From positions 1-64,000 of IMG/VR virus record IMGVR_UViG_3300035703_000008: 64,000 bases of DNA. The stretch is one strand, 5' to 3'. Position numbers and translations under genes: made by a program. Under the pieces are notes generated by a model, which searched no databases, was not told the origin of the DNA, and saw nothing but the letters and a program-made list of their open reading frames with translations. Shown here piece by piece: positions 1-63,423 of the stretch; position 1 is the stretch's first letter, and each line of letters opens with the position of its first letter.

Positions 1-67
1 CGACGGACGATATCGAATTGTCTATAACAACAACTGTGATGACCTATTGATCATGCCTCCGGGTCTT

Positions 68-75
68 TATAAATA
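68..75 (+). promoter_or_regulatory. T4-type late promoter TATAAATA
   Basis: Exact T4 late consensus 4 nt upstream of ORF 80; the core TAAATA recurs before many genes (1041, 1809, 2216, 32025, 60418, 61203, and 59003-59010 on the minus strand). Confidence 0.7.
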
Positions 76-79
76 ACTG

Positions 80-271
80 ATGCGTGCTCAAGAATTCCAA
101 CGACGCGGTCTCAAGACTTATGCGGCCAAGATAAAACTCCGGCAAATCGGGTATGTCAACATCATTGACACCACTGTGCAAGCACGCACTCCTGAGATGG
201 CACGTCGACTGCTGCGCCAGCTCTACGGTGATCGCCATGTGATCGTAGGTCAACCACGAGAGCTCAAATGA
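80..271 (+). CDS. small protein with MRAQEF leader (putative head-internal protein)
   Basis: Follows late promoter; ATGA overlap with next gene; N-terminus shared with three neighbours. Confidence 0.7.
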   Translation: MRAQEFQRRGLKTYAAKIKLRQIGYVNIIDTTVQARTPEMARRLLRQLYGDRHVIVGQPRELK

Positions 272-1047
272 GAGCCAGTGAATTCTCCAATTCCAAGCTG
301 GTGATCTTCGACATCGACGACACCTTGGTCAACACCGACACCCGTGTCAATGTGGTGCATGATGGCCGAGTGGTCAAACAGCTCAACAGCCACGACTTTA
401 CGCACTACAATCTCCAACCCGGTGAAGAATTTGACTTTGGTGCTTTCCGTGATGCTCGAGAATTTTTCACCAAGGCTCGACCTATACCGGGCATGATACG
501 TCAACTCAAACAAGACATCGCCACTGGCAACAAAGTCATCATGCTCACGGCACGCAGCGACTTCAATGATCGTGATGTGTTCTTGGACACATTCCGGCAA
601 TATGGCATAGACATGGATCGTGTGCATGTGTACCGTGCCGGAAATCTCGCCATCCGGGCCGCCACCGAAGAAAAGAAAAAGATCATACTCCAGCACCTTT
701 TGGGCAAACAGCACTATGACAAAGTGATCATGTATGATGACTCTGTGCCCAATCTCAATGCTTTCCTCAGTCTCCAACAAGACTACCCGTGGAGCCGGTT
801 CTATGCCTGGCATGTGGATCCCAATGGGCAGGCCTCAGAATATCACAGAACCAATGCAGGCGTCAAAGAAAACTTTGCGGATGGTAAGAAGCCTGGACGC
901 AAGGGCTTGAGTCGCAGAGTAGGTATACCCAAGAAAGCCACGCTGGGACAGTTGGAAAAGATAGCCAAGAGCAGCACAGGTGAGCGTCGCAGGATGGCAC
1001 AATGGCAACTCAACATGCGGCGTGGCAAAGCAAGAAGGAATAAATAA
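268..1047 (+). CDS. HAD-superfamily phosphatase with MRASEF leader and a basic C-terminal module
   Basis: IFDIDDTL (motif I), LTAR (motif II), MYDD (motif IV). Confidence 0.8.
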   Translation: MRASEFSNSKLVIFDIDDTLVNTDTRVNVVHDGRVVKQLNSHDFTHYNLQPGEEFDFGAFRDAREFFTKARPIPGMIRQLKQDIATGNKVIMLTARSDFNDRDVFLDTFRQYGIDMDRVHVYRAGNLAIRAATEEKKKIILQHLLGKQHYDKVIMYDDSVPNLNAFLSLQQDYPWSRFYAWHVDPNGQASEYHRTNAGVKENFADGKKPGRKGLSRRVGIPKKATLGQLEKIAKSSTGERRRMAQWQLNMRRGKARRNK

Positions 1048-1107
1048 AAATGTGGATCGCGAGGCGGCAACCTCCACCCACTCTAACATGAAAGGACCAT
1101 ATCAGCT

Positions 1108-1764
1108 GTGTATTTACAAAACAAATACAGCCGTTGGTATAATAGCATTGTTGATCGAGCAAGATCAAGAACCATCACGGGATATACCGAACGACATCAC
1201 ATCATCCCTCGCAGTTTAGGCGGCGATAACAGTCCATTCAATCTTGTAAATCTCACAGCCAGAGAACACTTCGTTTGCCATCTCTTGCTTACTCGTATGA
1301 CCACAAACGAAGCCCGTAAAAAAATGGTGATGTCTGTGTTCTATCTCACAGGTCGAGGCAAAGCAGATAGACAAAATGTCATCAAACAGTCTCGTCTTTA
1401 TGAAAAACTGCGACAAGAGTTGTCACAGATAGTGAGCCAGAAGAAAAAAGGTTGCCGCCAACCACCTCGCAGCGAACTGGCTAAACAGAGATATTCTCAA
1501 TCAAAAATAGGTCGAAACAATCCCAATGCTCGTGGATACTTTATCACGCCTTGGGGCCAATATGAATCGTCGAGATTAGCAGCTAAACATTGCCCGGTGC
1601 CAATTACCGGCAACTATATCATAAGACTCTGTACCACTAACAATCATATTCCAATAAATCTTTTGAGCGTGTGCAGAAGCAAAGCATATCTTGAAGAGAA
1701 ACACATAGGAAAAACACCATTTGAGATGGGCTTTGAATTTCATCCGTATGAAGTCAGGCCGTAA
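1108..1764 (+). CDS. HNH homing endonuclease
   Basis: ERHHIIPRSLGG..N...NLV.LTAREHFVCH; AT-rich; own TAAATA promoter at 1041. Confidence 0.85.
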   Translation: MYLQNKYSRWYNSIVDRARSRTITGYTERHHIIPRSLGGDNSPFNLVNLTAREHFVCHLLLTRMTTNEARKKMVMSVFYLTGRGKADRQNVIKQSRLYEKLRQELSQIVSQKKKGCRQPPRSELAKQRYSQSKIGRNNPNARGYFITPWGQYESSRLAAKHCPVPITGNYIIRLCTTNNHIPINLLSVCRSKAYLEEKHIGKTPFEMGFEFHPYEVRP

Positions 1765-1818
1765 AAAATCCTAATTGACTAGATACTCTGGTCATAAAAA
1801 TCCCCCACTAAATACAGT

Positions 1819-2124
1819 GTGGACACAACATATATCAGAGCTGTGATAGACATCCGCTGTGAGTGGGAAGGCCTTGAGCCAGCCTATCGCATCTACGTCA
1901 ACGAAGAACTGTTCACTGAACGCACCTGGACTTGGACTGATCACTACCTCGAAGAAGTGATACAGATACAGGCCTCGCCAGGGCGCTATCAAGTAAGATT
2001 GGAACCTGTGCCACCCACCCTGGCACGATTCACTGTGGGCAATCACAGAGTGGAACACGGACCTGCACAGTGGGTCAATGATCAAACATTGGAGATATCA
2101 GCGTGCGAGCCCGAGAATTCATAA
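1819..2124 (+). CDS. hypothetical protein
   Basis: ORF after CTAAATA late-promoter motif. Confidence 0.6.
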   Translation: MDTTYIRAVIDIRCEWEGLEPAYRIYVNEELFTERTWTWTDHYLEEVIQIQASPGRYQVRLEPVPPTLARFTVGNHRVEHGPAQWVNDQTLEISACEPENS

Positions 2125-2264
2125 ACGAAAATGCGGGCGTGACCACCGCGGCCTCTATGGCTCCTGTGAGCCAGAGCCTGGGCACACCGTTGACACGAGT
2201 ATCAACAAAGCCTGCTAAATATGCTAATAGCTTAACGAAACGGAAACCCAATGCTGGTAGATGA
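2103..2264 (+). CDS. 53-aa protein MRAREFINENAGVTTAASMA... (absent from ORF track)
   Basis: GTG start with GGAGA RBS at 2091; MRAxEF leader. Confidence 0.6.
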   Translation: MRAREFINENAGVTTAASMAPVSQSLGTPLTRVSTKPAKYANSLTKRKPNAGR

Positions 2265-2694
2265 CCTCAAAACACTGTTGGCCACGCAATATGCCTTCGT
2301 GATCAAAGCACAGTTCTTCCACTGGAACGTGGAAGGTCCTGACTTTGCACAACTGCATCGATTCTTTGGCAAGATCTACGAAGAAGTCTACGAAAACAGC
2401 ATAGACCAGACCGCAGAATTCATACGCATACTCGACGACTACACTCCCGGCAGTTTTGAGAGATTCGGCGAGCTCAGCCTCATCACCGGCCAGATCAAGG
2501 TACCGCGTGCTCGTCTCATGATCCAGGAACTCTTGGCCGACACGCAGACCTTGATCGATCAGCTCAACACCACTTTTGACGCAGCCGAATCCGAAGATCA
2601 GCAAGGCATCATGGACTTCCTGGCCAGTCGCATCGACGCCATGGGCAAGCATGGTTGGATGCTGAGGAGTTTCTTGAAAGAGGAGCGAGCATGA
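2251..2694 (+). CDS. dps: Dps/ferritin-like protein
   Basis: HWNVEGPDFAQLHRFF..IYEE and DQTAE ferroxidase motifs; KHGWML C-terminus. Confidence 0.9.
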   Translation: MLVDDLKTLLATQYAFVIKAQFFHWNVEGPDFAQLHRFFGKIYEEVYENSIDQTAEFIRILDDYTPGSFERFGELSLITGQIKVPRARLMIQELLADTQTLIDQLNTTFDAAESEDQQGIMDFLASRIDAMGKHGWMLRSFLKEERA

Positions 2695-3185
2695 GCCACG
2701 ATCTCCGCGACATACTGGGTCGTTTATCGGCCATCGAAGAAGGCCTGGACGCTGATCAGCGCCGGGTGAAACAACTGCCAGCCCTGTTCCGGCCTCGGAA
2801 AACATCACCGGTCCTGGACGGACCCTACGGCAAACGCGATGCCATGGACGGATACCTCGTGGGCGAAGACATGGTCAGTGCCGAGAAAAAGCGTCTCAGT
2901 GACTATCTACATGACGTGGCCCAGGCCATCGAAAAAGACGCAGATCTCGTCAACACCGACTCGCGTGGCCAGGACACCGTGAAGTCAGTGAAGACCATAC
3001 GCACCGACGACGGACATGAGATCAAGATCGTGGGCAACGAAGACGACGGATTCCGTGTGAGCATACGGGACCAGCAAGGTCACACACGATTCAATAACCT
3101 CGACGAGGCCGTGATGGCCTGCGAGATGTACTGCGCCCGCCGCCGCCAGCGCCGATCCAGCCAAGATTACATAGAAGAAGCCTGA
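2691..3185 (+). CDS. hypothetical (putative head-internal) protein
   Basis: GAGGAG RBS; MSHDLRDILGRLSAIEE leader ending in Glu. Confidence 0.65.
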   Translation: MSHDLRDILGRLSAIEEGLDADQRRVKQLPALFRPRKTSPVLDGPYGKRDAMDGYLVGEDMVSAEKKRLSDYLHDVAQAIEKDADLVNTDSRGQDTVKSVKTIRTDDGHEIKIVGNEDDGFRVSIRDQQGHTRFNNLDEAVMACEMYCARRRQRRSSQDYIEEA

Positions 3186-3187
3186 CC

Positions 3188-4789
3188 ATGAACCTACGAG
3201 ATCTATTTGAGAACAACGAACCCACTGCCATGGCCCAGGCTGTGACACGGAGGATACTGAGCACACGCAGTGACCTCTTGAGCCGCTACGGAGTCGAAGC
3301 TGTGAGCCAGGCCATTGATGATGTCACCCAAGGTGACGACTGGGAAGAGATCGGCAGCTCAGACGTGAGTACCTATGTGCGATATGTGGAAGATTACCTG
3401 CGCGATCACCATGGCAGCCGTGAGGAGATGGCGGATCGTCGACCATTCGCCGAACAAGGTGTCTCGGAAATGGATTCGCAAGGTTATCGAGGTCATCGCG
3501 GTGATGAAGATCCAGGCAAAGGTCCAGAAAAAGTAGTCAAGCCAGCCAAGACAAAAGATGTTGCCAAAGACGCAGAAAAAGAATTAACCAAAGCAATGGA
3601 TAAGGCACACAAGAAAGGTGTGGCGGAAGGCACTGAACAAGTTTATAAAGTTCTAGCAGTAGACAAGAGCAATGCATTGTCTGATAAAGTTATGCTAACT
3701 GTAAAAGCAGGTTCTATAGCAGAAGTGTTTGAACGATTGGCCATGAGTGATTGGTATCCATTGTCAATCAACGGTGCGGAAGTCATCGACGGCCGGCGTC
3801 TAAAGCCGGGTGTGGCGGAAGGCTCCGAACAAGTGTATAAAGTCATAGCCGTTGACAAAAACAATGCCCTAGGTAAAAAAGTCAAACTGAATGTCAAGGC
3901 CAGTTCCGTAGAAGAAGTCTTTGAACGATTGGCAATGAGTGATTGGTATCCTTTGGAAATTAATGGTGTTGAAGTCATTGCTGGCAAGCGTCTAAAGCAA
4001 GGTGTGGCGGAAAACCAACGCCGTTTCAACAATGTCAACGACGATGATCTCTATGCTGTAGATCCCCGAACCAAAGAGATCATAGCCCACCTTGGCAATC
4101 CCTACAACAATAGAACGGCTGTATTGATCAAAAAACGCCAGCACGAACAGCAGGGCCACGAGGTCATGTCAGGTATGCGAGCTAAATTCTACAGAGACGT
4201 CGATGAGCAAGGTGTGGCGGAAGGCACTGAAGGCAACTGGTATGTTCGTGTTAAAGGTAAAGTTCTCAAAGATAGCAAATTTAATGCTATCCCTTTTGCA
4301 TCACAAGATGAAGCAAGAAATCATGCATTGACACTTGCTAGAAAGAAAAATATACCATTATCTCAAGTAAAACTTACAAGAAGTTGGATGGATGCACCTG
4401 AGTCAGAGGTTTCGGAAGGTGAATCACAAACTGTAGAAGTTGTGATCAGTGATGGCACACAGCGTCAGCGTCGCAGAGTTCGTGTTAGTCCCAATACACG
4501 CAATGTCGAAGCTGCAGTGTTAAAGTACTATGCCAAAGTAGGACTGCCAGTTGTATCTATCAATGGCCGACCTGTGAGGGCTGCCATGGCCGAGGGCGAT
4601 GGCAGCACATGTCCTGAGTGCGGTGGTCCCATATTCAAGAGCCGGTTCATGGCCGAAGAGCAGGACGCCTGCTATCGCAAAGTCAAAAGCAGATACAAGG
4701 TGTGGCCATCGGCCTATGCGTCAGGCGCTCTGGTGCAGTGCCGCAAGAAAGGTGCTGCCAACTGGGGCACAGGAGGTAAGAAAAAATGA
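3188..4789 (+). CDS. modular polyprotein with repeated GVAE junctions (putative protease-processed head protein)
   Basis: GVSE, four GVAE, EVSE and two MAE junctions separate ~50-70 aa modules. Confidence 0.8.
   Translation: MNLRDLFENNEPTAMAQAVTRRILSTRSDLLSRYGVEAVSQAIDDVTQGDDWEEIGSSDVSTYVRYVEDYLRDHHGSREEMADRRPFAEQGVSEMDSQGYRGHRGDEDPGKGPEKVVKPAKTKDVAKDAEKELTKAMDKAHKKGVAEGTEQVYKVLAVDKSNALSDKVMLTVKAGSIAEVFERLAMSDWYPLSINGAEVIDGRRLKPGVAEGSEQVYKVIAVDKNNALGKKVKLNVKASSVEEVFERLAMSDWYPLEINGVEVIAGKRLKQGVAENQRRFNNVNDDDLYAVDPRTKEIIAHLGNPYNNRTAVLIKKRQHEQQGHEVMSGMRAKFYRDVDEQGVAEGTEGNWYVRVKGKVLKDSKFNAIPFASQDEARNHALTLARKKNIPLSQVKLTRSWMDAPESEVSEGESQTVEVVISDGTQRQRRRVRVSPNTRNVEAAVLKYYAKVGLPVVSINGRPVRAAMAEGDGSTCPECGGPIFKSRFMAEEQDACYRKVKSRYKVWPSAYASGALVQCRKKGAANWGTGGKKK
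3617..4224 (+). repeat. dispersed in-frame repeat GGTGTGGCGGAA(GG)
   Basis: Exact copies at 3617, 3809, 4001, 4211 (spacing 192, 192, 210); degenerate copies at 3458 and 4406. Confidence 0.9.
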
Positions 4790-5181
4790 GAGACATCATT
4801 GATCTACTGGAGGCCATCGAACAGGGTTGCCCTCCAGCCACGCAGAACATCGATCTCAACTTGAAGAATCGCCAGCGGGCCATTGACGAATATCATTATG
4901 GTCCGCTCAATCCTGCCCGGCCCAGCCTGGAGTATTGGCAAGAACTGGCAGATCAATGGAATACATCTGTAGAAGAAGCACAGAGTGCCAGATGTAGAAA
5001 CTGTGCCGCTTTCGACATCACCCAAAAGACCTTGGATTGTATCGACCGAGGCATAGGTGGCGACGACGATTGGGATATCATCAAAGCCGGCAAACTGGGC
5101 TATTGTAGATTCCTCAAGTTCAAATGCAATGCTTTGCGTTCGTGCTCGGCGTGGGTGGAAGGCGGACCTGTTCGAGACTGA
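4786..5181 (+). CDS. Cys-rich hypothetical protein
   Basis: MRDIIDLLEAIE leader; CRNC...GYC....FKC....SC zinc-binding-like pattern. Confidence 0.7.
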   Translation: MRDIIDLLEAIEQGCPPATQNIDLNLKNRQRAIDEYHYGPLNPARPSLEYWQELADQWNTSVEEAQSARCRNCAAFDITQKTLDCIDRGIGGDDDWDIIKAGKLGYCRFLKFKCNALRSCSAWVEGGPVRD

Positions 5182-5182
5182 T

Positions 5183-5557
5183 ATGAGAGCCCAAGAATTC
5201 GTCACCGAAAAGTGGAGCACCAAGTATAAACGCTCTATCAATTGCTCTGACCCTCGGGGATTCAGCCAGCGTGCCCATTGTCAGGGTCGTAAGAAAAACA
5301 ATGAAGATCAAGACCTGGCGGAAGATCTACGCAAGTGGTTCCGAGAAAAGTGGGTTCGTTTTGGCCCTGATGGAAAGATTCGCGGGGATTGTGCTCGCGG
5401 ATCCGACGCTGAGGGCAAGCCCAAGTGCCTGCCACAATCAAAGGCACATGCCCTGGGCAAGAAAGGTCGTGCGAGTGCGGCAGCCCGTAAGCGCAGACAA
5501 GATCCCAATGCCGACCGCCGTGGCGCTGCACGGAATGTTCCCACGAAAAAATCATGA
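5183..5557 (+). CDS. basic two-module protein with MRAQEFVTE leader
   Basis: ATG at 5183; modules separated by LAE. Confidence 0.7.
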   Translation: MRAQEFVTEKWSTKYKRSINCSDPRGFSQRAHCQGRKKNNEDQDLAEDLRKWFREKWVRFGPDGKIRGDCARGSDAEGKPKCLPQSKAHALGKKGRASAAARKRRQDPNADRRGAARNVPTKKS

Positions 5558-5779
5558 CATTCGTTGATCCCAATAACTACCCTGTGTGGCCCGAAGACGA
5601 CGGCACAGATCAAAAAAGAAATCCCTATAGTCCAGTTTAACGATGAAAAAACCCACTCCACAAAAACCCGCATTCCAACCCCAAGTGGTCCAGCACGGCA
5701 GCCCCATACGACGCATGACACCACCGCCCCGGATGAGCCAGCGAGCAGTATTCGTGAGTGTGCCAATCCGCCTCAACGG

Positions 5780-6466
5780 ATGAGTGTCATGCATGATATT
5801 CCATCCGTGGAATCTCTGGAAATAATCAACGAAAAAGAACTGGATTTGATATCCAATGATTTTCATGATCGTATACTGACCCACGGACAAGATCGCATCG
5901 ACTATGATGAGGAGACTGCCATGGATCGTCGATTGACATTGTCGCTCACAGATCCCATGCACCAACTGATAAGCAACATCATATGGCGTGGCATAGAACG
6001 ATTTCCGTCACCGGGCAAGATCACTGGACTCTATATTGCTTATCAACGACAGTATATCCCACACAACTTACATGTAGATGTCGGCGATGACCCCAATGTC
6101 GACAATCGCGGCGGATTCAGTATGATTATTCCCATCAGCGAAGACCCAGGGTTCCAAACCCTGATATGGAATCTGGAATGCAACGTCAAATCGACGTTTC
6201 TACGTTGGGTGTCATCCATTGACTGGAAAAATGATGCTGTTCTCAGCGATGTTGGAAAAGACTACAACGTCGATCACTGTCGAGGACCCGATGGTTCGCT
6301 GGCAATGAATTATCTAGAGTTCCTGGGAGCCTATCAATATCGTCGCGGCACAGTAGGCAAGTTTCCCAGGAATCATCCACACTGCAGCTCGAACTGGAAA
6401 GCGTCGGGTCGACACTCGCACAAAGATTTCGTTATAATACACAGCCTAGTTATCGACAATGTCTGA
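5780..6466 (+). CDS. putative 2OG-Fe(II) oxygenase-like protein
   Basis: HVD plus distal H (HPH); paralogue of 10223..10897; start uncertain. Confidence 0.55.
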   Translation: MSVMHDIPSVESLEIINEKELDLISNDFHDRILTHGQDRIDYDEETAMDRRLTLSLTDPMHQLISNIIWRGIERFPSPGKITGLYIAYQRQYIPHNLHVDVGDDPNVDNRGGFSMIIPISEDPGFQTLIWNLECNVKSTFLRWVSSIDWKNDAVLSDVGKDYNVDHCRGPDGSLAMNYLEFLGAYQYRRGTVGKFPRNHPHCSSNWKASGRHSHKDFVIIHSLVIDNV

Positions 6467-60129: not shown

Positions 60130-60212
60130 GGATGACGGGCGGCATTGGCGACCGCAGCGGACTGTAAATCCGTGCCTTCGGGAACGGGGTTCGAATCCCT
60201 GGTCATCCACCA
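60130..60212 (+). tRNA. tRNA-Tyr (GTA)
   Basis: Cloverleaf, long variable arm, CCA. Confidence 0.88.
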
Positions 60213-60326
60213 AGATGCACAGCGTCGCTCTACGCTGTGGCAGGACGGCCTCTCGATGCTAGCCACGAAGCCTCTCAAACTGCGACTAGAGCTCTACTTG
60301 CAAGGTTGAGCATAGCACCATTTCAT

Positions 60327-60401
60327 GCACCGTTCGTCTATCGGTTAGGACACATCCCTTTCACGGATGGAAGAGGAGTTCGATTCTCCTACGGTGTACC
60401 A
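60327..60401 (+). tRNA. tRNA-Glu (TTC)
   Basis: Cloverleaf, CCA. Confidence 0.92.
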
Positions 60402-60443
60402 TTTTAGGTTAGTTTGCTAAATAAAGTAAAGGAAAACTAACCA

Positions 60444-60887
60444 ATGGCATTAGGAACTTGTAAAACCTGTAGTAAAGAGTTTAGATTCTTCGGAAGTCAA
60501 TCATCGGGTCAATTCTGTTCGAGAGAATGCACCCACGATTACAGAACTAAACTGATTATGGAAAGCGGTAAAGGTAATAAGACCAATGCTGCAACATATT
60601 TGCGAAGATTTGTAAAATACGAATGTTCTTATTGTGGAATCAGTAATTGGCAAGGAAAGCCAATCTCACTGCAAATCGATCACATAGACGGAAACAATAA
60701 AAATAATACAATCGAAAACATAAGATGGTTATGCCCAAATTGTCATAGTCAAACTCCAACTTGGGGATTTAAAAATGCTAGTGAATCCTCGAAACAGGCA
60801 AGCCAACAAGGAGCAAAAAAAGGCAACCAAAAAAATCATCTAAACAATAAATCTTGTCTATCGATAGCAGATTTAGAAAGGTTGTAA
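60444..60887 (+). CDS. HNH homing endonuclease
   Basis: CSYC, LQIDHIDGN..NN..EN.RWLCPNCH; AT-rich. Confidence 0.9.
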   Translation: MALGTCKTCSKEFRFFGSQSSGQFCSRECTHDYRTKLIMESGKGNKTNAATYLRRFVKYECSYCGISNWQGKPISLQIDHIDGNNKNNTIENIRWLCPNCHSQTPTWGFKNASESSKQASQQGAKKGNQKNHLNNKSCLSIADLERL

Positions 60888-60914
60888 GGGGTTCGATTCC
60901 CCTACGGTGTACCA
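60856..60914 (+). pseudogene. remnant second copy of tRNA-Glu (T arm, acceptor 3' strand, CCA)
   Basis: AGGGGTTCGATTCCCCTACGGTGTACCA versus AGGAGTTCGATTCTCCTACGGTGTACCA; GTCTATCG D-arm fragment. Confidence 0.8.
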
Positions 60915-60938
60915 TATATACAGAGCAAGGAGAAAGCC

Positions 60939-61121
60939 ATGCTCACAGGTTGGTTTCTGGTAGTGATGTTGTCCACGGTGGATCGATATCAGATCATCGG
61001 GCTCTATGCCACCGAACAGCACTGCCTCAAGGCACGAGAAAAATTGATGGTACATGTGTATCGTCAAGAACAGCGTGGCATGGAGTGTGTGTCGGTGGAA
61101 CAAGCCAGGCGTTGGAAATAA
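60939..61121 (+). CDS. small protein with hydrophobic N-terminus and two Cys
   Basis: AAGGAG RBS. Confidence 0.6.
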   Translation: MLTGWFLVVMLSTVDRYQIIGLYATEQHCLKAREKLMVHVYRQEQRGMECVSVEQARRWK

Positions 61122-61125
61122 CTGT

Positions 61126-61200
61126 CGCGGGATGGAGAAGAGGCAACTCGCCAGCCTCATAAGCTGGAGATCGCAGGTTCGATTCCTGCTCCCGCTACCA
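61126..61200 (+). tRNA. tRNA-Met (CAT), initiator-like
   Basis: C1:U72 mismatch, CGCGGG start, CCA. Confidence 0.85.
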
Positions 61201-61209
61201 TATAAATAC

Positions 61210-61283
61210 GCGGCGGTCGTATAATGGTAATACCTTAGCCTTCCAAGCTAAAGCCAGGGGTTCGATTCCCCTTCGCCGCTCCA
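61210..61283 (+). tRNA. tRNA-Gly (TCC)
   Basis: Cloverleaf, U73, CCA. Confidence 0.92.
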
Positions 61284-61291
61284 AGTTTTTT

Positions 61292-61367
61292 TGACCGAAA
61301 CGCACAACGGTGTGCGGCCGGACTGTTAATCCGTGTGAGTCAGGTTCGATCCCTGATCGGTCAGCCA
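61292..61367 (+). tRNA. tRNA-Asn (GTT)
   Basis: Cloverleaf with atypical D arm, G73, CCA. Confidence 0.82.
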
Positions 61368-61374
61368 AGATCAT

Positions 61375-61448
61375 TCCGGCGTGGTATAGTGGCATTACAG
61401 CGGTCTCCAAAACCGTTAAGGGGAGTTCGATTCTCTCCGCCGGAGCCA
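61375..61448 (+). tRNA. tRNA-Trp (CCA)
   Basis: Cloverleaf, CCA. Confidence 0.9.
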
Positions 61449-61453
61449 AACAT

Positions 61454-61531
61454 GCAACGATGGCAGAGTGGTCCAATGCACGGGCCTGCAAAACCCGAAA
61501 GTCGCTGGTTCGAATCCAGCTCGTTGCTCCA
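61454..61531 (+). tRNA. tRNA-Cys (GCA)
   Basis: Cloverleaf, U73, CCA. Confidence 0.9.
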
Positions 61532-61558
61532 CAAAAAAACACAAGAAAGGAGGCGATG

Positions 61559-62164
61559 ATGCCAGCAGTATTTCTAGTCAGCGACACGCATTTTGGTCAT
61601 GCCGGCGTGTGTCGCTTCACAAGATCGGATGGTGTGACCAAACTGCGTCCCTGGGACGACGCCGCGGAGATGGATGAAGCCATGATCCGGGCCTGGAACG
61701 AGCGTGTGCGGCCTAACGACAAAGTCTATCACCTAGGCGATGTTGTGATCAATCGCAAATCATTGACGACATTGGCTCGTCTGAATGGCGACAAAGTGCT
61801 CATCCGTGGCAATCACGACATCTTCAAAGATGAGGATTACGCTCCTTACTTCAGGAGCATCCGTGCTTACCATGTCATGAACGGCATGATCCTTAGCCAT
61901 ATCCCTGTTCACGAAGCCAGCCTGGGTCGATTTGGTGTCAACATCCACGGACACTTGCATGCCAACCGAGTGACGCGAGCTAGGGGTGTCAATGCCCGGT
62001 CTGGAGAAATCCAGTACACCGACGAGATTGACCCCAGATACCATTGCGTGTGCGTGGAACAGACTCCGGACTTTGCTCCCATCCTTTTCGAAGACGTGAT
62101 CAAGAGGATCGAAGCCGAAGGCGGTCAAATAGGGTTCCGCAACGGCAATGGTCCGGTGATGTAG
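61559..62164 (+). CDS. calcineurin-like metallophosphoesterase
   Basis: SDTHFGH, HLGD, GNHD, SH.P, HGHLH; AAGGAGG RBS. Confidence 0.9.
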   Translation: MPAVFLVSDTHFGHAGVCRFTRSDGVTKLRPWDDAAEMDEAMIRAWNERVRPNDKVYHLGDVVINRKSLTTLARLNGDKVLIRGNHDIFKDEDYAPYFRSIRAYHVMNGMILSHIPVHEASLGRFGVNIHGHLHANRVTRARGVNARSGEIQYTDEIDPRYHCVCVEQTPDFAPILFEDVIKRIEAEGGQIGFRNGNGPVM

Positions 62165-62167
62165 ATT

Positions 62168-62243
62168 CCGACCGTAGCTCAGTGGATAGAGCATCTGCCT
62201 TCTAAGCAGAGAGTCGCAGGTTCGATTCCTGCCGGTCGGGCCA
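62168..62243 (+). tRNA. tRNA-Arg (TCT)
   Basis: Cloverleaf, CCA. Confidence 0.93.
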
Positions 62244-62461
62244 GTAAAAAGCATATTGCTACAAGTGCAAACAGATTTCGAGACGATGTCATATAATAAT
62301 ACATGCGTTCAAAATCTGTCGTTCCTGTTGTTTTGCTCATACTCTTTGCCTTGGCTCTGATCGCTGTCGGCGAAGTCCTGGAGTGTGTGATGTTGATCAA
62401 TCCCTATGAGACCTGGTGCGATTGATTTTGATCCACTGCCACACAAAGTTTAAATATCCAT

Positions 62462-63202
62462 ATGGCCACTTATACTCGTCAAACCGTTACCCATGTGCAT
62501 CACTGGAGTGATCGCACCTTTACCTTTCGTTGCACACGTGATCGGTCATTCCGATTCGCTGCCGGTGAATTCGTCATGATCGGACTCGAAGTCGAGGGTC
62601 GGGCCGTGCTGCGTGCCTATTCAGTGACCTCGGCGCCCTGGGAAGAAGAACTGGAGTTCCTGTCGATCAAGATCGCCGACGGCGAACTCACCAGCCGACT
62701 ACAACACATACAAGTGGGCGATACCGTGTTGATCGGCGAACGTGCCACCGGTACGTTAAGGAACGAAGCTCTTGCGCCCGGGCGCGATCTCTGGATGCTG
62801 GCCACTGGCACAGGACTGGCACCATTCATGAGCCTGATGCGTGACCTTGACACCATCGAGCGTTGGCAGCATCTACATGTGGTACACAGCGTGAGACATG
62901 GCCAGGACTTGGCCTATCACAACCAGCTGGCGGAGGCCTTTGCCGGCGAAGACCTGCATGACTTGGTGGCCGCCAAACTGGTCTATCATCCAGTGGTCAC
63001 TGGCGAGGGTGCAGCTCGCATCGGCGATCAGCTCAAGTCAGGTCAGTTGGAGTTGGATCCTGATCAGGATCGTGTGATGCTGTGCGGCAATCTCGAGTTC
63101 AATCATGAACTGGCCGAATGGTGCCGCGGTGCAGGCATGACCGAGGGTTTGATGCGTAGGCCTGGTGGCTTCGTGCTGGAACGAGCCTTTGTGGAAAAAT
63201 AA
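62462..63202 (+). CDS. fpr: ferredoxin/flavodoxin-NADP+ reductase
   Basis: RAYS, GELTSRL, ATGTGLAPF, MLCG, ERAFVEK. Confidence 0.92.
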   Translation: MATYTRQTVTHVHHWSDRTFTFRCTRDRSFRFAAGEFVMIGLEVEGRAVLRAYSVTSAPWEEELEFLSIKIADGELTSRLQHIQVGDTVLIGERATGTLRNEALAPGRDLWMLATGTGLAPFMSLMRDLDTIERWQHLHVVHSVRHGQDLAYHNQLAEAFAGEDLHDLVAAKLVYHPVVTGEGAARIGDQLKSGQLELDPDQDRVMLCGNLEFNHELAEWCRGAGMTEGLMRRPGGFVLERAFVEK

Positions 63203-63213
63203 TAGATCTAGAT

Positions 63214-63287
63214 GCGGGTATGGTTTAATGGTAAAACGAAACCTTGCCAAGGTTTAGTTGCGAGTTCGATTCTCGCTACCCGCTCCA
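63214..63287 (+). tRNA. tRNA-Gly (GCC)
   Basis: Cloverleaf, CCA. Confidence 0.92.
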
Positions 63288-63293
63288 CGCTGG

Positions 63294-63322
63294 TTGACAT
63301 CTAAAACCCGATATTGTATACT
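63294..63322 (+). promoter_or_regulatory. sigma70 promoter
   Basis: TTGACA-17-TATACT. Confidence 0.85.
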
Positions 63323-63332
63323 AACAACAACT

Positions 63333-63423
63333 GGAGACGTGACCGAGAGGCCGAAGGTGCTCCCCTGCTAAGGGAGTATGCGCCAAAAGCGCATCGTGGG
63401 TTCGAATCCCACCGTCTCCGCCA
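63333..63423 (+). tRNA. tRNA-Ser (GCT)
   Basis: Cloverleaf, long variable arm, CCA. Confidence 0.93.

What the first reader, a model, noticed from the sequence alone, without database searches (positions are those of the whole stretch)
80..5557. Four late proteins share an MRAxEF leader resembling the T4 capsid-targeting sequence
Seen: MRAQEF (80), MRASEF (268), MRAREFINE (2103, missing from the ORF track) and MRAQEFVTE (5183). Three neighbours start with related Glu-terminated leaders (MNLRDLFE, MRDIIDLLEAIE, MSHDLRDILGRLSAIEE). Known: T4 internal proteins carry a ~10-aa MKTYQEFIAE-type capsid-targeting sequence that the gp21 protease removes after Glu. Inference: this block encodes cargo packaged in the head and injected with the DNA.
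Basis: partly seen in the sequence, partly recalled or inferred. Interest (0 to 1): 0.6.

Follow-up and report, generated by a model that had tools for sequence, protein, structure and literature searches.

The report
Capsid-targeting leader on jumbo-phage cargo proteins
An uncultured giant T4-like phage puts the same nine-residue tag (MRAxEF, usually followed by I/L/V-x-E) at the start of many unrelated, mostly basic proteins; the tag closely resembles the T4 signal that loads proteins into the phage head for injection, so it may let the injected proteins of such phages be read from sequence alone.

Summary
The four MRAxEF starts are at 80, 268, 2103 (GTG) and 5183. The 209-kb contig has two more, at 184831 and 198233. 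RAxEF occurs nowhere else in any of its six frames.

The contig is about 60% of a ~340-kb T4-like jumbo phage. It encodes a gp21-type prohead protease and a gp23 capsid protein. In relatives from IMG/VR the same leader heads about 60 unrelated protein families. The leader is the most conserved part of these proteins, and it is conserved as peptide rather than as RNA.

A hydrophobic residue at position 7 and Glu at position 9 occur together (54 of 59). This is a T4-type cleavage site; gp21 cuts after Glu. The same small Cys-rich basic modules occur either just behind the leader or inside larger proteins, nearly always behind [LIVM]-x-E. All six local products are basic (pI 9.3-12).

T4 ipI, ipII and ipIII begin MKT[YF][QK]EF. 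T4-like cyanophages carry intermediate leaders on a shared module.

Best reading: a capsid-targeting propeptide, cleaved by the prohead protease where the site is present. No virion data exist and no cultured relative carries the leader, so packaging and cleavage are inferred. It is a new variant of a known mechanism.

The parts
68..75 (+). TATAAATA, a T4-late-promoter-type motif 4 nt upstream of the ATG at 80
   Evidence: The NTAAATA motif is about 25-fold enriched upstream of ORFs in this genome.
80..271 (+). 63-aa basic protein (pI 11.2) starting MRAQEF, with no [ILV]-x-E site after the leader
   Evidence: It belongs to a family of 10 members in relatives.
268..1047 (+). 259-aa protein starting MRASEF: a HAD-type phosphatase domain followed by a basic C-terminal module behind V-K-E. 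The start overlaps the stop of the previous gene (ATGA).
   Evidence: Pfam HAD families and phrog_415. 192 relatives in IMG/VR. pI 9.9.
2103..2264 (+). 53-aa protein with a GTG start, MRAREFINE; the predicted mature part has pI 11.8
   Evidence: Conserved family with M1, R2, E5 and E9 invariant.
2691..3185 (+). 164-aa protein with a different Glu-terminated amphipathic N-terminus (MSHDLRDILGRLSAIEE)
   Evidence: The N-terminus is conserved in L003 and L006.
3188..4789 (+). 533-aa modular protein. It starts MNLRDLFE, followed by units of about 53-70 aa separated by G-V-A-E|G-type junctions. The last unit is a DUF5872-like Cys/basic module.
   Evidence: phrog_727, phrog_3477, weak DUF5872.
4786..5181 (+). 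131-aa protein with the leader MRDIIDLLEAIE
   Evidence: Conserved in relatives (MRNLINRMEAIE, MRELITLVEAAE).
5183..5557 (+). 124-aa protein starting MRAQEFVTE, then two Cys/basic modules (YKRSINC type, then KWVRFGPDG type) joined by L-A-E|D. The mature part has pI 10.6.
   Evidence: (phrog_23735 and phrog_727).

Best explanation
MRAxEF is the capsid-targeting propeptide of an uncultured clade of T4-like jumbo phages with genomes of about 340-525 kb. It is the counterpart of the T4 CTS, MKT[YF][QK]EF.

Inferred mechanism:
1. The tagged proteins are made together with the structural proteins.
2. The N-terminal core (Arg2, Glu5, Phe6) binds them to the scaffolding core of the prohead.
3. After shell assembly the gp21-type protease (contig 160596-161222) cuts after Glu wherever a hydrophobic-x-Glu site follows. 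That site is at residues 7-9 in 2103, 5183, 184831 and 198233.
4. The protease also cuts at internal [LIVM]-x-E junctions. This would release ~50-70-aa Cys-rich basic modules from multi-module proteins such as 3188-4789.
5. Proteins without the site (80 and 268) stay uncut.
6. The mature, mostly basic products remain in the head with the DNA and enter the host at infection.

Shown here: the motif, its restriction to N-termini, its peptide-level conservation, the coupling of positions 7 and 9, the shared junction logic, the presence of the protease, and the basic charge of the products.

Inferred: binding to the core, cleavage, packaging and injection.
For: - N-terminal restriction: 6 of 6 RAxEF occurrences in the genome and 109 of 120 in relatives follow a start codon. 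Complete genomes have 4-5 each against 0 in the control.
- Protease and capsid: gp21-family protease PF03420 and gp23 are present. All four carrier genomes that are at least 90% complete have the protease.
- Match to T4: the T4 leaders read from NC_000866 are MKTYQEFIAE (ipII, ipIII) and MKTFKEF...ITE (ipI). In T4, targeting maps to residues 4 and 7, processing maps to residues 8 and 10, and Asp10 blocks cutting (PMC9026906).
- Coupled cleavage site: among 59 unique strict leaders with a hydrophobic residue at position 7, position 9 is Glu in 54 and Asp in 1. With a non-hydrophobic residue at 7 (34 leaders), Glu does not appear among the residues listed at position 9. Position 5 tolerates Asp. 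The background Glu:Asp ratio is 0.8.
- Many cargo families: about 61 unrelated families carry the broad leader M-R-x-x-[ED]-[FLIVM].
- Strongest conservation in the leader: in a 46-member family with 33% mean identity, the invariant columns are M1, R2, A3, F6 and E9 plus only four others. 110 of the 120 best database homologues start M[RK]AxEF.
- Peptide-level selection: codons at Ala3, Glu5 and Phe6 follow background usage.
- Shared junction logic: four small modules occur both behind the leader (22 cases) and internally (46 cases). P1 is Glu in 60 of 68 and P3 is usually L/I/V/M.
- The phage's own head proteins fit the same protease specificity. gp23 has ILE-34 and LKE-42 where T4 gp23 is cut. 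The gp22-like scaffold has 26 [LIVM]xE sites.
- Charge: all six local products have pI 9.3-12.0, against a genome median of 5.8 with 17% of ORFs above 9.
- Gene context: 184831 follows the head-tail adaptor gene, and 198233 precedes a virion structural protein gene.
- Cargo types in relatives suit ejected proteins: M23 peptidase with a peptidoglycan-binding domain, LysM with GH19, ParB_N and GNAT.
- Bridge to T4: T4-like cyanophages carry the same YKKSIDC module behind MKSFKQFQE or ...FEEFRE.
Against: - There are no virion proteomics, no N-terminal sequence and no cultured carrier. The closest cultured phages (PA5oct, Vibrio 2.275.O, Erwinia pEa_SNUABM_19, Sinorhizobium Phosso) lack the leader.
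- The late-promoter motif is no more frequent before leader genes than before neighbouring genes.
- Two families have a Tat export signal directly after the leader (L106). This is unexpected for a head-internal protein.
- Some cargo (HAD phosphatase, GNAT) has no obvious role as an injected protein.
- Arg2 is AGA or CGA in 96% of leaders, against 36% in the background. Some nucleotide-level or initiation-level constraint therefore acts as well.
- The complex prediction of the protease with a substrate could not be run.
Confidence: 0.66

Rival explanations
1. The leader is an address or recognition tag for some machinery other than the prohead. Candidates are a phage chaperone or unfoldase, an export route to the envelope, or a modifying enzyme. 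On this view the following [LIVM]-x-E is a linker feature rather than a prohead-protease site.
For: Two families carry a Tat signal right after the leader. Several cargo proteins act on the cell wall: M23 peptidase, and LysM with GH19. A Clp-like ATPase fragment lies upstream of the cluster in L011; this rests on my reading of the N-terminal sequence and was not tested.
Against: - The motif matches the T4 CTS at the residues shown experimentally to matter (PMC9026906).
- Strict Glu at position 9, coupled to a hydrophobic residue at position 7, is what a Glu-specific prohead protease predicts.
- All complete carriers have that protease.
- The products are basic, like the T4 internal proteins.
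- The leader is charged and not hydrophobic, so it is not itself an export signal.
Confidence: 0.17
2. The shared start is an expression or recombination cassette. On this view a conserved 5' coding segment is kept for efficient translation initiation or coupling, or serves as a landing site for swapping genes, and the peptide itself has no function.
For: - Arg2 is AGA or CGA in 96% of leaders, and GCA is enriched at Ala3.
- Many starts overlap or abut the upstream stop codon (135 of 209 have a stop within 12 nt).
- NTAAATA often lies only 5 nt before the ATG.
- The loci are hypervariable in gene content.
Against: - Synonymous codons at Glu5 and Phe6 follow background usage, and Ala3 largely does, with GCA enriched.
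- Arg codons differ among the six local genes: CGT, AGA and CGA.
- The peptide is invariant across homologues of about 30% identity.
- The coupling of positions 7 and 9 and the exclusion of Asp are amino-acid rules.
- Recombination at the leader may still occur in addition, as proposed for T-even internal-protein genes.
Confidence: 0.1
3. The resemblance among the four proteins is chance, or is ordinary paralogy.
For: Some members share basic C-terminal modules.
Against: All six RAxEF occurrences in the six frames are at start codons. The mature parts fall into unrelated families. Control patterns give zero matches.
Confidence: 0.02

Closest known systems
[quoted passage not shown]
   Same: - A short N-terminal tag with a basic residue at position 2, a Glu-Phe core, and then hydrophobic-x-Glu.
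- The tag sits on unrelated, basic proteins.
- A gp21-family protease that cuts after Glu is present.
- Some members have the cleavage site further downstream. T4 IPI has it at ITE-19; here a subfamily has it at residues 11-13.
   Different: - The consensus is one residue shorter and differs at positions 2-4 (MRA-x versus MKT-[YF]-[QK]).
- The cargo has no detectable homology to T4 internal proteins (no such PHROG or Pfam hit).
- The cargo range is far wider and includes enzymes, cell-wall hydrolases and Tat-signal proteins.
- Multi-module proteins are delimited by the same cleavage motif.
- The T4 CTS is proven experimentally; this one is not.
Hypervariable internal-protein loci of T-even phages (Repoila et al. 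1994, as cited in PMC9026906 and PMC3012670)
   Same: Clusters of diverse genes that share only the CTS-like leader, and whose gene content varies between close relatives.
   Different: Here the phenomenon is seen across a distant, uncultured jumbo clade, with dozens of families and at least two or three clusters per genome.
Ejection (E) proteins of phiKZ-like and SPN3US-like giant phages, with propeptides cut at (A/S/G)-x-E
   Same: Many head-internal proteins are processed after Glu by a gp21-related protease. Paralogues share conserved N-termini (PMC5694885).
   Different: Those propeptides are mostly longer than 100 residues and the P3 residue is small. Here the leader has 9-13 residues and P3 is hydrophobic, as in T4.
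Polyvalent proteins of phages and conjugative elements (Iyer et al. 2017; recalled from my own knowledge, not read here)
   Same: Multi-domain proteins combining small DNA-binding modules with enzymes such as ParB-N, kinase, acetyltransferase and peptidase, proposed to be delivered together with the DNA.
   Different: Only weak or partial domain matches were found here (ParB_N at 26.1 bits, just under its 26.3-bit cut-off, and Kinase-PolyVal also below its cut-off). The defining large fusions lie next to the cluster rather than forming it.

Membership tests
T4-type CTS-bearing internal head proteins | The tag lies at the extreme N-terminus of the primary translation product | tested here: met
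   6 of 6 RAxEF occurrences in the genome and 109 of 120 in relatives follow a start codon directly. 110 of 120 independently called database homologues start with it.
T4-type CTS-bearing internal head proteins | Sequence resemblance to the T4 CTS, including the Phe needed for targeting and the Ile and Glu needed for processing | tested here: met
   T4 ipII and ipIII are MKTYQEFIAE, and ipI is MKTFKEF..ITE. Here the consensus is M-R-A-x-E-F-[ILV]-x-E. Residue roles come from PMC9026906. Positions 2-4 differ.
T4-type CTS-bearing internal head proteins | The genome encodes a gp21-family (S77) prohead protease that cuts after Glu | tested here: met
   PF03420 scores 89 bits at 160596-161222. It is present in 4 of 4 complete carrier genomes. 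The specificity itself is inferred from T4.
T4-type CTS-bearing internal head proteins | Hydrophobic-x-Glu cleavage site at the end of the leader | tested here: met
   Present in 4 of the 6 local genes (2103, 5183, 184831, 198233) and absent in 80 and 268. 54 of 59 strict leaders with a hydrophobic residue at 7 have Glu at 9.
T4-type CTS-bearing internal head proteins | The same tag on otherwise unrelated, basic proteins | tested here: met
   About 61 families carry it. The six local products have pI 9.3-12.0, against a genome median of 5.8.
T4-type CTS-bearing internal head proteins | Mature protein present in virions with the leader removed | not testable with these tools
   No cultured carrier and no proteome exist. 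The cultured relatives lack the leader.
T4-type CTS-bearing internal head proteins | The leader alone is sufficient to package a foreign protein | not testable with these tools
   This needs a genetic system for a carrier phage.
T4-type CTS-bearing internal head proteins | Direct contact of the leader with the protease or the scaffold | not tested
Polyvalent proteins | Large fusions of several effector domains typical of the class | tested here: inconclusive
   Local genes have one to about eight small modules. In relatives ParB_N scores 26.1 bits, just under its 26.3-bit cut-off, and Kinase-PolyVal is also below its cut-off. A 1,699-aa protein with a nucleotidyltransferase and an amidoligase domain lies just upstream in relatives.

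The most novel reading that the evidence does not exclude
The leader may be a sequence-readable address label that defines the whole injected proteome of a widespread, uncultured clade of freshwater jumbo phages. On this reading:
- Dozens of effector families could be listed from metagenomes alone.
- Multi-module precursors are diced by the prohead protease at [LIVM]-x-E into ~60-aa Cys-rich basic modules that travel with the DNA.
- Some cargo carries a second address, a Tat signal exposed by removal of the leader. Such a protein would be injected into the cytoplasm and then re-exported to the periplasm by the host.
Probability: 0.3. Interest if true: 0.75.

Novelty: new variant of a known kind. 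Interest (0 to 1): 0.55.

Why it matters
Injected phage proteins are the first phage products to act in the host cell. In T4 they include inhibitors of host defence, such as IPI*, which blocks GmrSD. They are hard to find because they share no homology with one another.

If MRAxEF marks them, this clade's ejected proteins can be listed from sequence alone. The 198233 family by itself has more than 500 clusters in public metagenomes, all annotated as hypothetical. The list would give candidate anti-defence and cell-entry factors. It would also give a natural nine-residue packaging tag for a second capsid system.

The rule that modules are preceded by [LIVM]-x-E further suggests that prohead proteases process multi-module cargo precursors, which is not a feature described for T4.

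Tried and rejected
- Megablast of 1-6000 against cultured phages found no match.
- Pattern scans of PA5oct, Vibrio phage 2.275.O, Erwinia pEa_SNUABM_19 and Sinorhizobium Phosso found only background hits, none at annotated starts. The PA5oct virion mass-spectrometry annotation therefore could not be used.
- Carrier contigs of 40-45 kb looked as if they might be T7-like phages, which lack a prohead protease. CheckV rates them 11-13% complete, so they are fragments of jumbo genomes and this objection falls.
- GAATTC encodes Glu-Phe in all six local leaders, but relatives use all four codon pairs, and GAATTC is not avoided in the genome (84 sites). Nothing special here.
- Late-promoter enrichment specific to leader genes was not found: 17% against 19% for neighbouring genes.
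- The structure of the 198233 family (pLDDT 78, pTM 0.48) had no fold match in the PDB or BFVD beyond one uncharacterised phage protein.
It was redone from references.
- A RiPP-type leader was considered and rejected because the cargo includes folded enzymes of 100-600 aa.
- No reads tools were used. Only genetic code 11 was used.


Full report
**Observation**

The window is the first 64 kb of a 208,932-bp IMG/VR contig with 50% G+C. CheckV rates it about 60% complete.
- 80: ATG, MRAQEF, 63 aa.
- 268: ATG, MRASEF, 259 aa.
- 2103: GTG, MRAREFINE, 53 aa.
- 5183: ATG, MRAQEFVTE, 124 aa.

The three neighbouring Glu-terminated N-termini at 2691, 3188 and 4786 are also present.

A whole-contig scan adds two more starts, 184831 (MRASEFIDE) and 198233 (MRAREFLAE). 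RAxEF occurs six times in all six reading frames of the contig, and each occurrence follows a start codon. Chance is therefore excluded. The six genes use CGT, AGA or CGA for Arg and GCT or GCC for Ala, so they are not copies of one DNA segment.

**What the phage is**

The contig encodes a gp21-family prohead protease (PF03420, 160596-161222) and a gp23 major capsid protein (PF07068, 162341-163558). It also has a portal gene, a gp22-like scaffold gene, and tail sheath and adaptor genes.

The closest cultured phages by gp23 (63-66% identity) are the jumbo myoviruses PA5oct, Vibrio phage 2.275.O, Erwinia pEa_SNUABM_19 and Sinorhizobium Phosso. None of them carries the leader.

IMG/VR holds many uncultured relatives with contigs of up to 340-525 kb.

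**Spread of the leader**

I fetched 80 loci around homologues of the HAD gene at 268. In these loci, 114 ORFs start M[RK]AxEF, all on the coding strand. 109 of 120 RAxEF occurrences follow a start codon.

With the looser form M-R-x-x-[ED]-[FLIVM] there are 300 starts in about 61 unrelated families.

Nearly all of the 80 loci read are true ORF starts of 60-480 aa.

The 40-45-kb carrier contigs are fragments, 11-13% complete. All four carriers that are at least 90% complete have the gp21 protease. Each has 4-5 strict leaders in two or three clusters, and the reversed-pattern control finds none.

**Peptide or RNA**

Across 209 distinct leader genes, synonymous codons at Glu5 and Phe6 follow background usage. 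Ala3 largely does, with GCA enriched (49% against 34%). The constraint is therefore mainly on the peptide.

Arg2 is the exception: it is AGA or CGA in 96% of leaders, against 36% in the background. This fits a preference for A-rich codons near the start and for ATGA overlaps with the upstream stop codon.

In the 46-member family of the 198233 protein, mean identity is 33%. The invariant columns are M1, R2, A3, F6 and E9 plus only four others. Among the 120 best of 524 database clusters of this family, 110 start M[RK]AxEF. All that carry a name are called hypothetical, apart from one automatic 'predicted transcriptional regulator', and none has a Pfam domain.

**The cleavage logic**

The real T4 leaders, read from NC_000866, are MKTYQEFIAE (ipII, ipIII) and MKTFKEFTSTTTPVSTITE (ipI).

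Published T4 mutagenesis places targeting at residues 4 and 7 and processing at residues 8 and 10. Asp10 blocks cutting but not packaging (PMC9026906). T4, phiKZ-like and SPN3US proteases all cut after Glu (PMC5694885).

The leaders here follow the same rules:
- Among 59 unique strict leaders with a hydrophobic residue at position 7, position 9 is Glu in 54 and Asp in 1.
- Among 34 strict leaders with a non-hydrophobic residue at 7, Glu does not appear among the residues listed at position 9.
- Position 5 accepts Asp freely.
- The background Glu:Asp ratio in these proteins is 0.8.

A subfamily of the 198233 family has the [LI]-x-E at residues 11-13 instead of 7-9. This resembles the later site in T4 IPI.

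The phage's own head proteins fit the same specificity:
- gp23 has ILE-34 and LKE-42 where T4 gp23 is cut.
- The scaffold has 26 [LIVM]xE sites.
- Two small head-core proteins start MILNEIYE and MNKFEQLIE.

**Modules and junctions**

The 533-aa product of 3188-4789 is built of units of about 53-70 aa. They are joined by G-V-A-E|G, V-S-E|G or M-A-E|G.

Four small Cys-rich basic modules recur in the clade:
- A DUF5872-like module (CYxKVKSRYKVWPSAY).
- KWVRFGPDG...KCLP.
- CWxGY...VPNC.
- YKRSINC.

They occur either directly behind an MRAxEF...E leader (22 cases) or inside larger proteins (46 cases). In both settings they sit behind [LIVM]-x-E, with P1 = Glu in 60 of 68 cases. This equivalence between the end of the leader and the internal junctions is the strongest computational argument that both are protease sites.

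**Cargo**

All six local products are basic, with pI 9.3-12.0. The genome median is 5.8, and 17% of ORFs are above 9. The T4 internal proteins are likewise highly basic (PMC8442874).

Local domains are a HAD-type phosphatase (268) and the phrog_727 / phrog_23735 modules.

In relatives the leader heads proteins with these domains:
- PG_binding with Peptidase_M23.
- LysM with GH19.
- GNAT.
- ParB_N.
- DUF6934.

Two families carry a Tat signal directly after the leader: L006:9606, where Pfam TAT_signal covers residues 9-29, and L106:2992.

184831 follows the head-tail adaptor gene. 198233 precedes a virion structural protein gene.

**Bridge to T4**

T4-like cyanophages carry the YKKSIDC module behind MKSFKQFQE (Bellamy gp122) or behind an internal ...FEEFRE (S-SM2 gp108, which itself starts MKTLKQFLKE). 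These genes lie between the terminase genes. The leaders are intermediate between the T4 form and the MRAxEF form.

**Timing**

NTAAATA is about 25-fold enriched upstream of ORFs. It precedes structural genes as well as the genes at 80, 1819, 2251, 193981 and 194529. It is not more frequent before leader genes than before their neighbours: 17% against 19%. Late expression is therefore plausible but is not specific evidence.

**Verdict**

The best explanation is a T4-type capsid-targeting propeptide, cleaved by the gp21-type protease where the site exists (confidence 0.66).

Rival explanations:
- A tag for other machinery (0.17). This is prompted by the Tat signals and the cell-wall enzymes.
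- An expression or recombination cassette (0.10). This is prompted by the Arg2 codon bias.
- Chance or paralogy (0.02).

Packaging, cleavage and injection are inferred. The structure model of the 198233 family has no known fold match.

The mechanism is known from T4. What is new is the distinct consensus, the clade, the breadth of cargo and the multi-module precursors, so I rate it a new variant of a known kind.

Noticed in passing
window 68-79, 1807-1818; contig 193971, 200374, 201108, 204304: The late-promoter-like NTAAATA motif lies only 4-8 nt (mode 5) before the start codon of many genes. Among leader genes with the motif, 31 of 35 have this spacing. The transcripts may therefore be leaderless or nearly so.
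   Followed up: partly
window 1108-1764: An HNH homing endonuclease (phrog_655, E 2e-41) sits between the HAD gene and the conserved 101-aa gene. It is absent at this position in L003, L006 and L011, so it looks like a mobile insertion.
   Followed up: partly
window 2251-2694: A Dps/ferritin-like gene (PF00210, phrog_3636 'DNA binding protein') lies inside the cluster, is preceded by CTAAATA and is conserved in relatives. It has no MRAxEF leader. Whether it is also a head protein is open.
   Followed up: no
L006:9606-10001 and L106:2992-3609: A twin-arginine (Tat) signal starts immediately after the nine-residue leader in two different families. Removing the leader would expose it at the new N-terminus.
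   Followed up: partly
L006:3926-9022 (also L003:4977-10001, L011:3904-9456): A 1,675-1,851-aa protein with nucleotidyltransferase and amidoligase domains directly precedes the leader cluster in relatives. This contig, and the 209.5-kb contig behind L008, both break at this point.
   Followed up: partly
window 62168-62243 (tRNA cluster 60130-63423, and 49115): The window holds eleven tRNA genes. One is tRNA-Arg(TCT), which reads AGA, the codon used at leader position 2 in 78% of 209 leaders.
   Followed up: no
whole contig: CTTAAG and GTTAAC occur once each in 209 kb, and AAGCTT and TACGTA four times each, against a median of 34 for 6-bp palindromes. This suggests avoidance of restriction sites.
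   Followed up: no
T4 NC_000866 18966-19130 (L229): T4 has a fourth gene starting MKTFKEF: gene 61.1, a 54-aa hypothetical protein next to the primase gene and outside the annotated internal-protein genes.
   Followed up: partly
L227:2501-2656 (Bellamy gp122), L228:2174-2602 (S-SM2 gp108): T4-like cyanophages encode the YKKSIDC Cys/basic module, with CTS-like leaders, between the terminase genes g16 and g17.
   Followed up: partly
L101, L102, L118, L131, L143, L146, L173 and others: The ~125-aa leader-bearing family of 198233 often occurs as tandem pairs 370-400 bp apart. Each upstream copy ends F-[KR]-G-Y-[PK]-[RK] right before the next MRAxEF start.
   Followed up: partly
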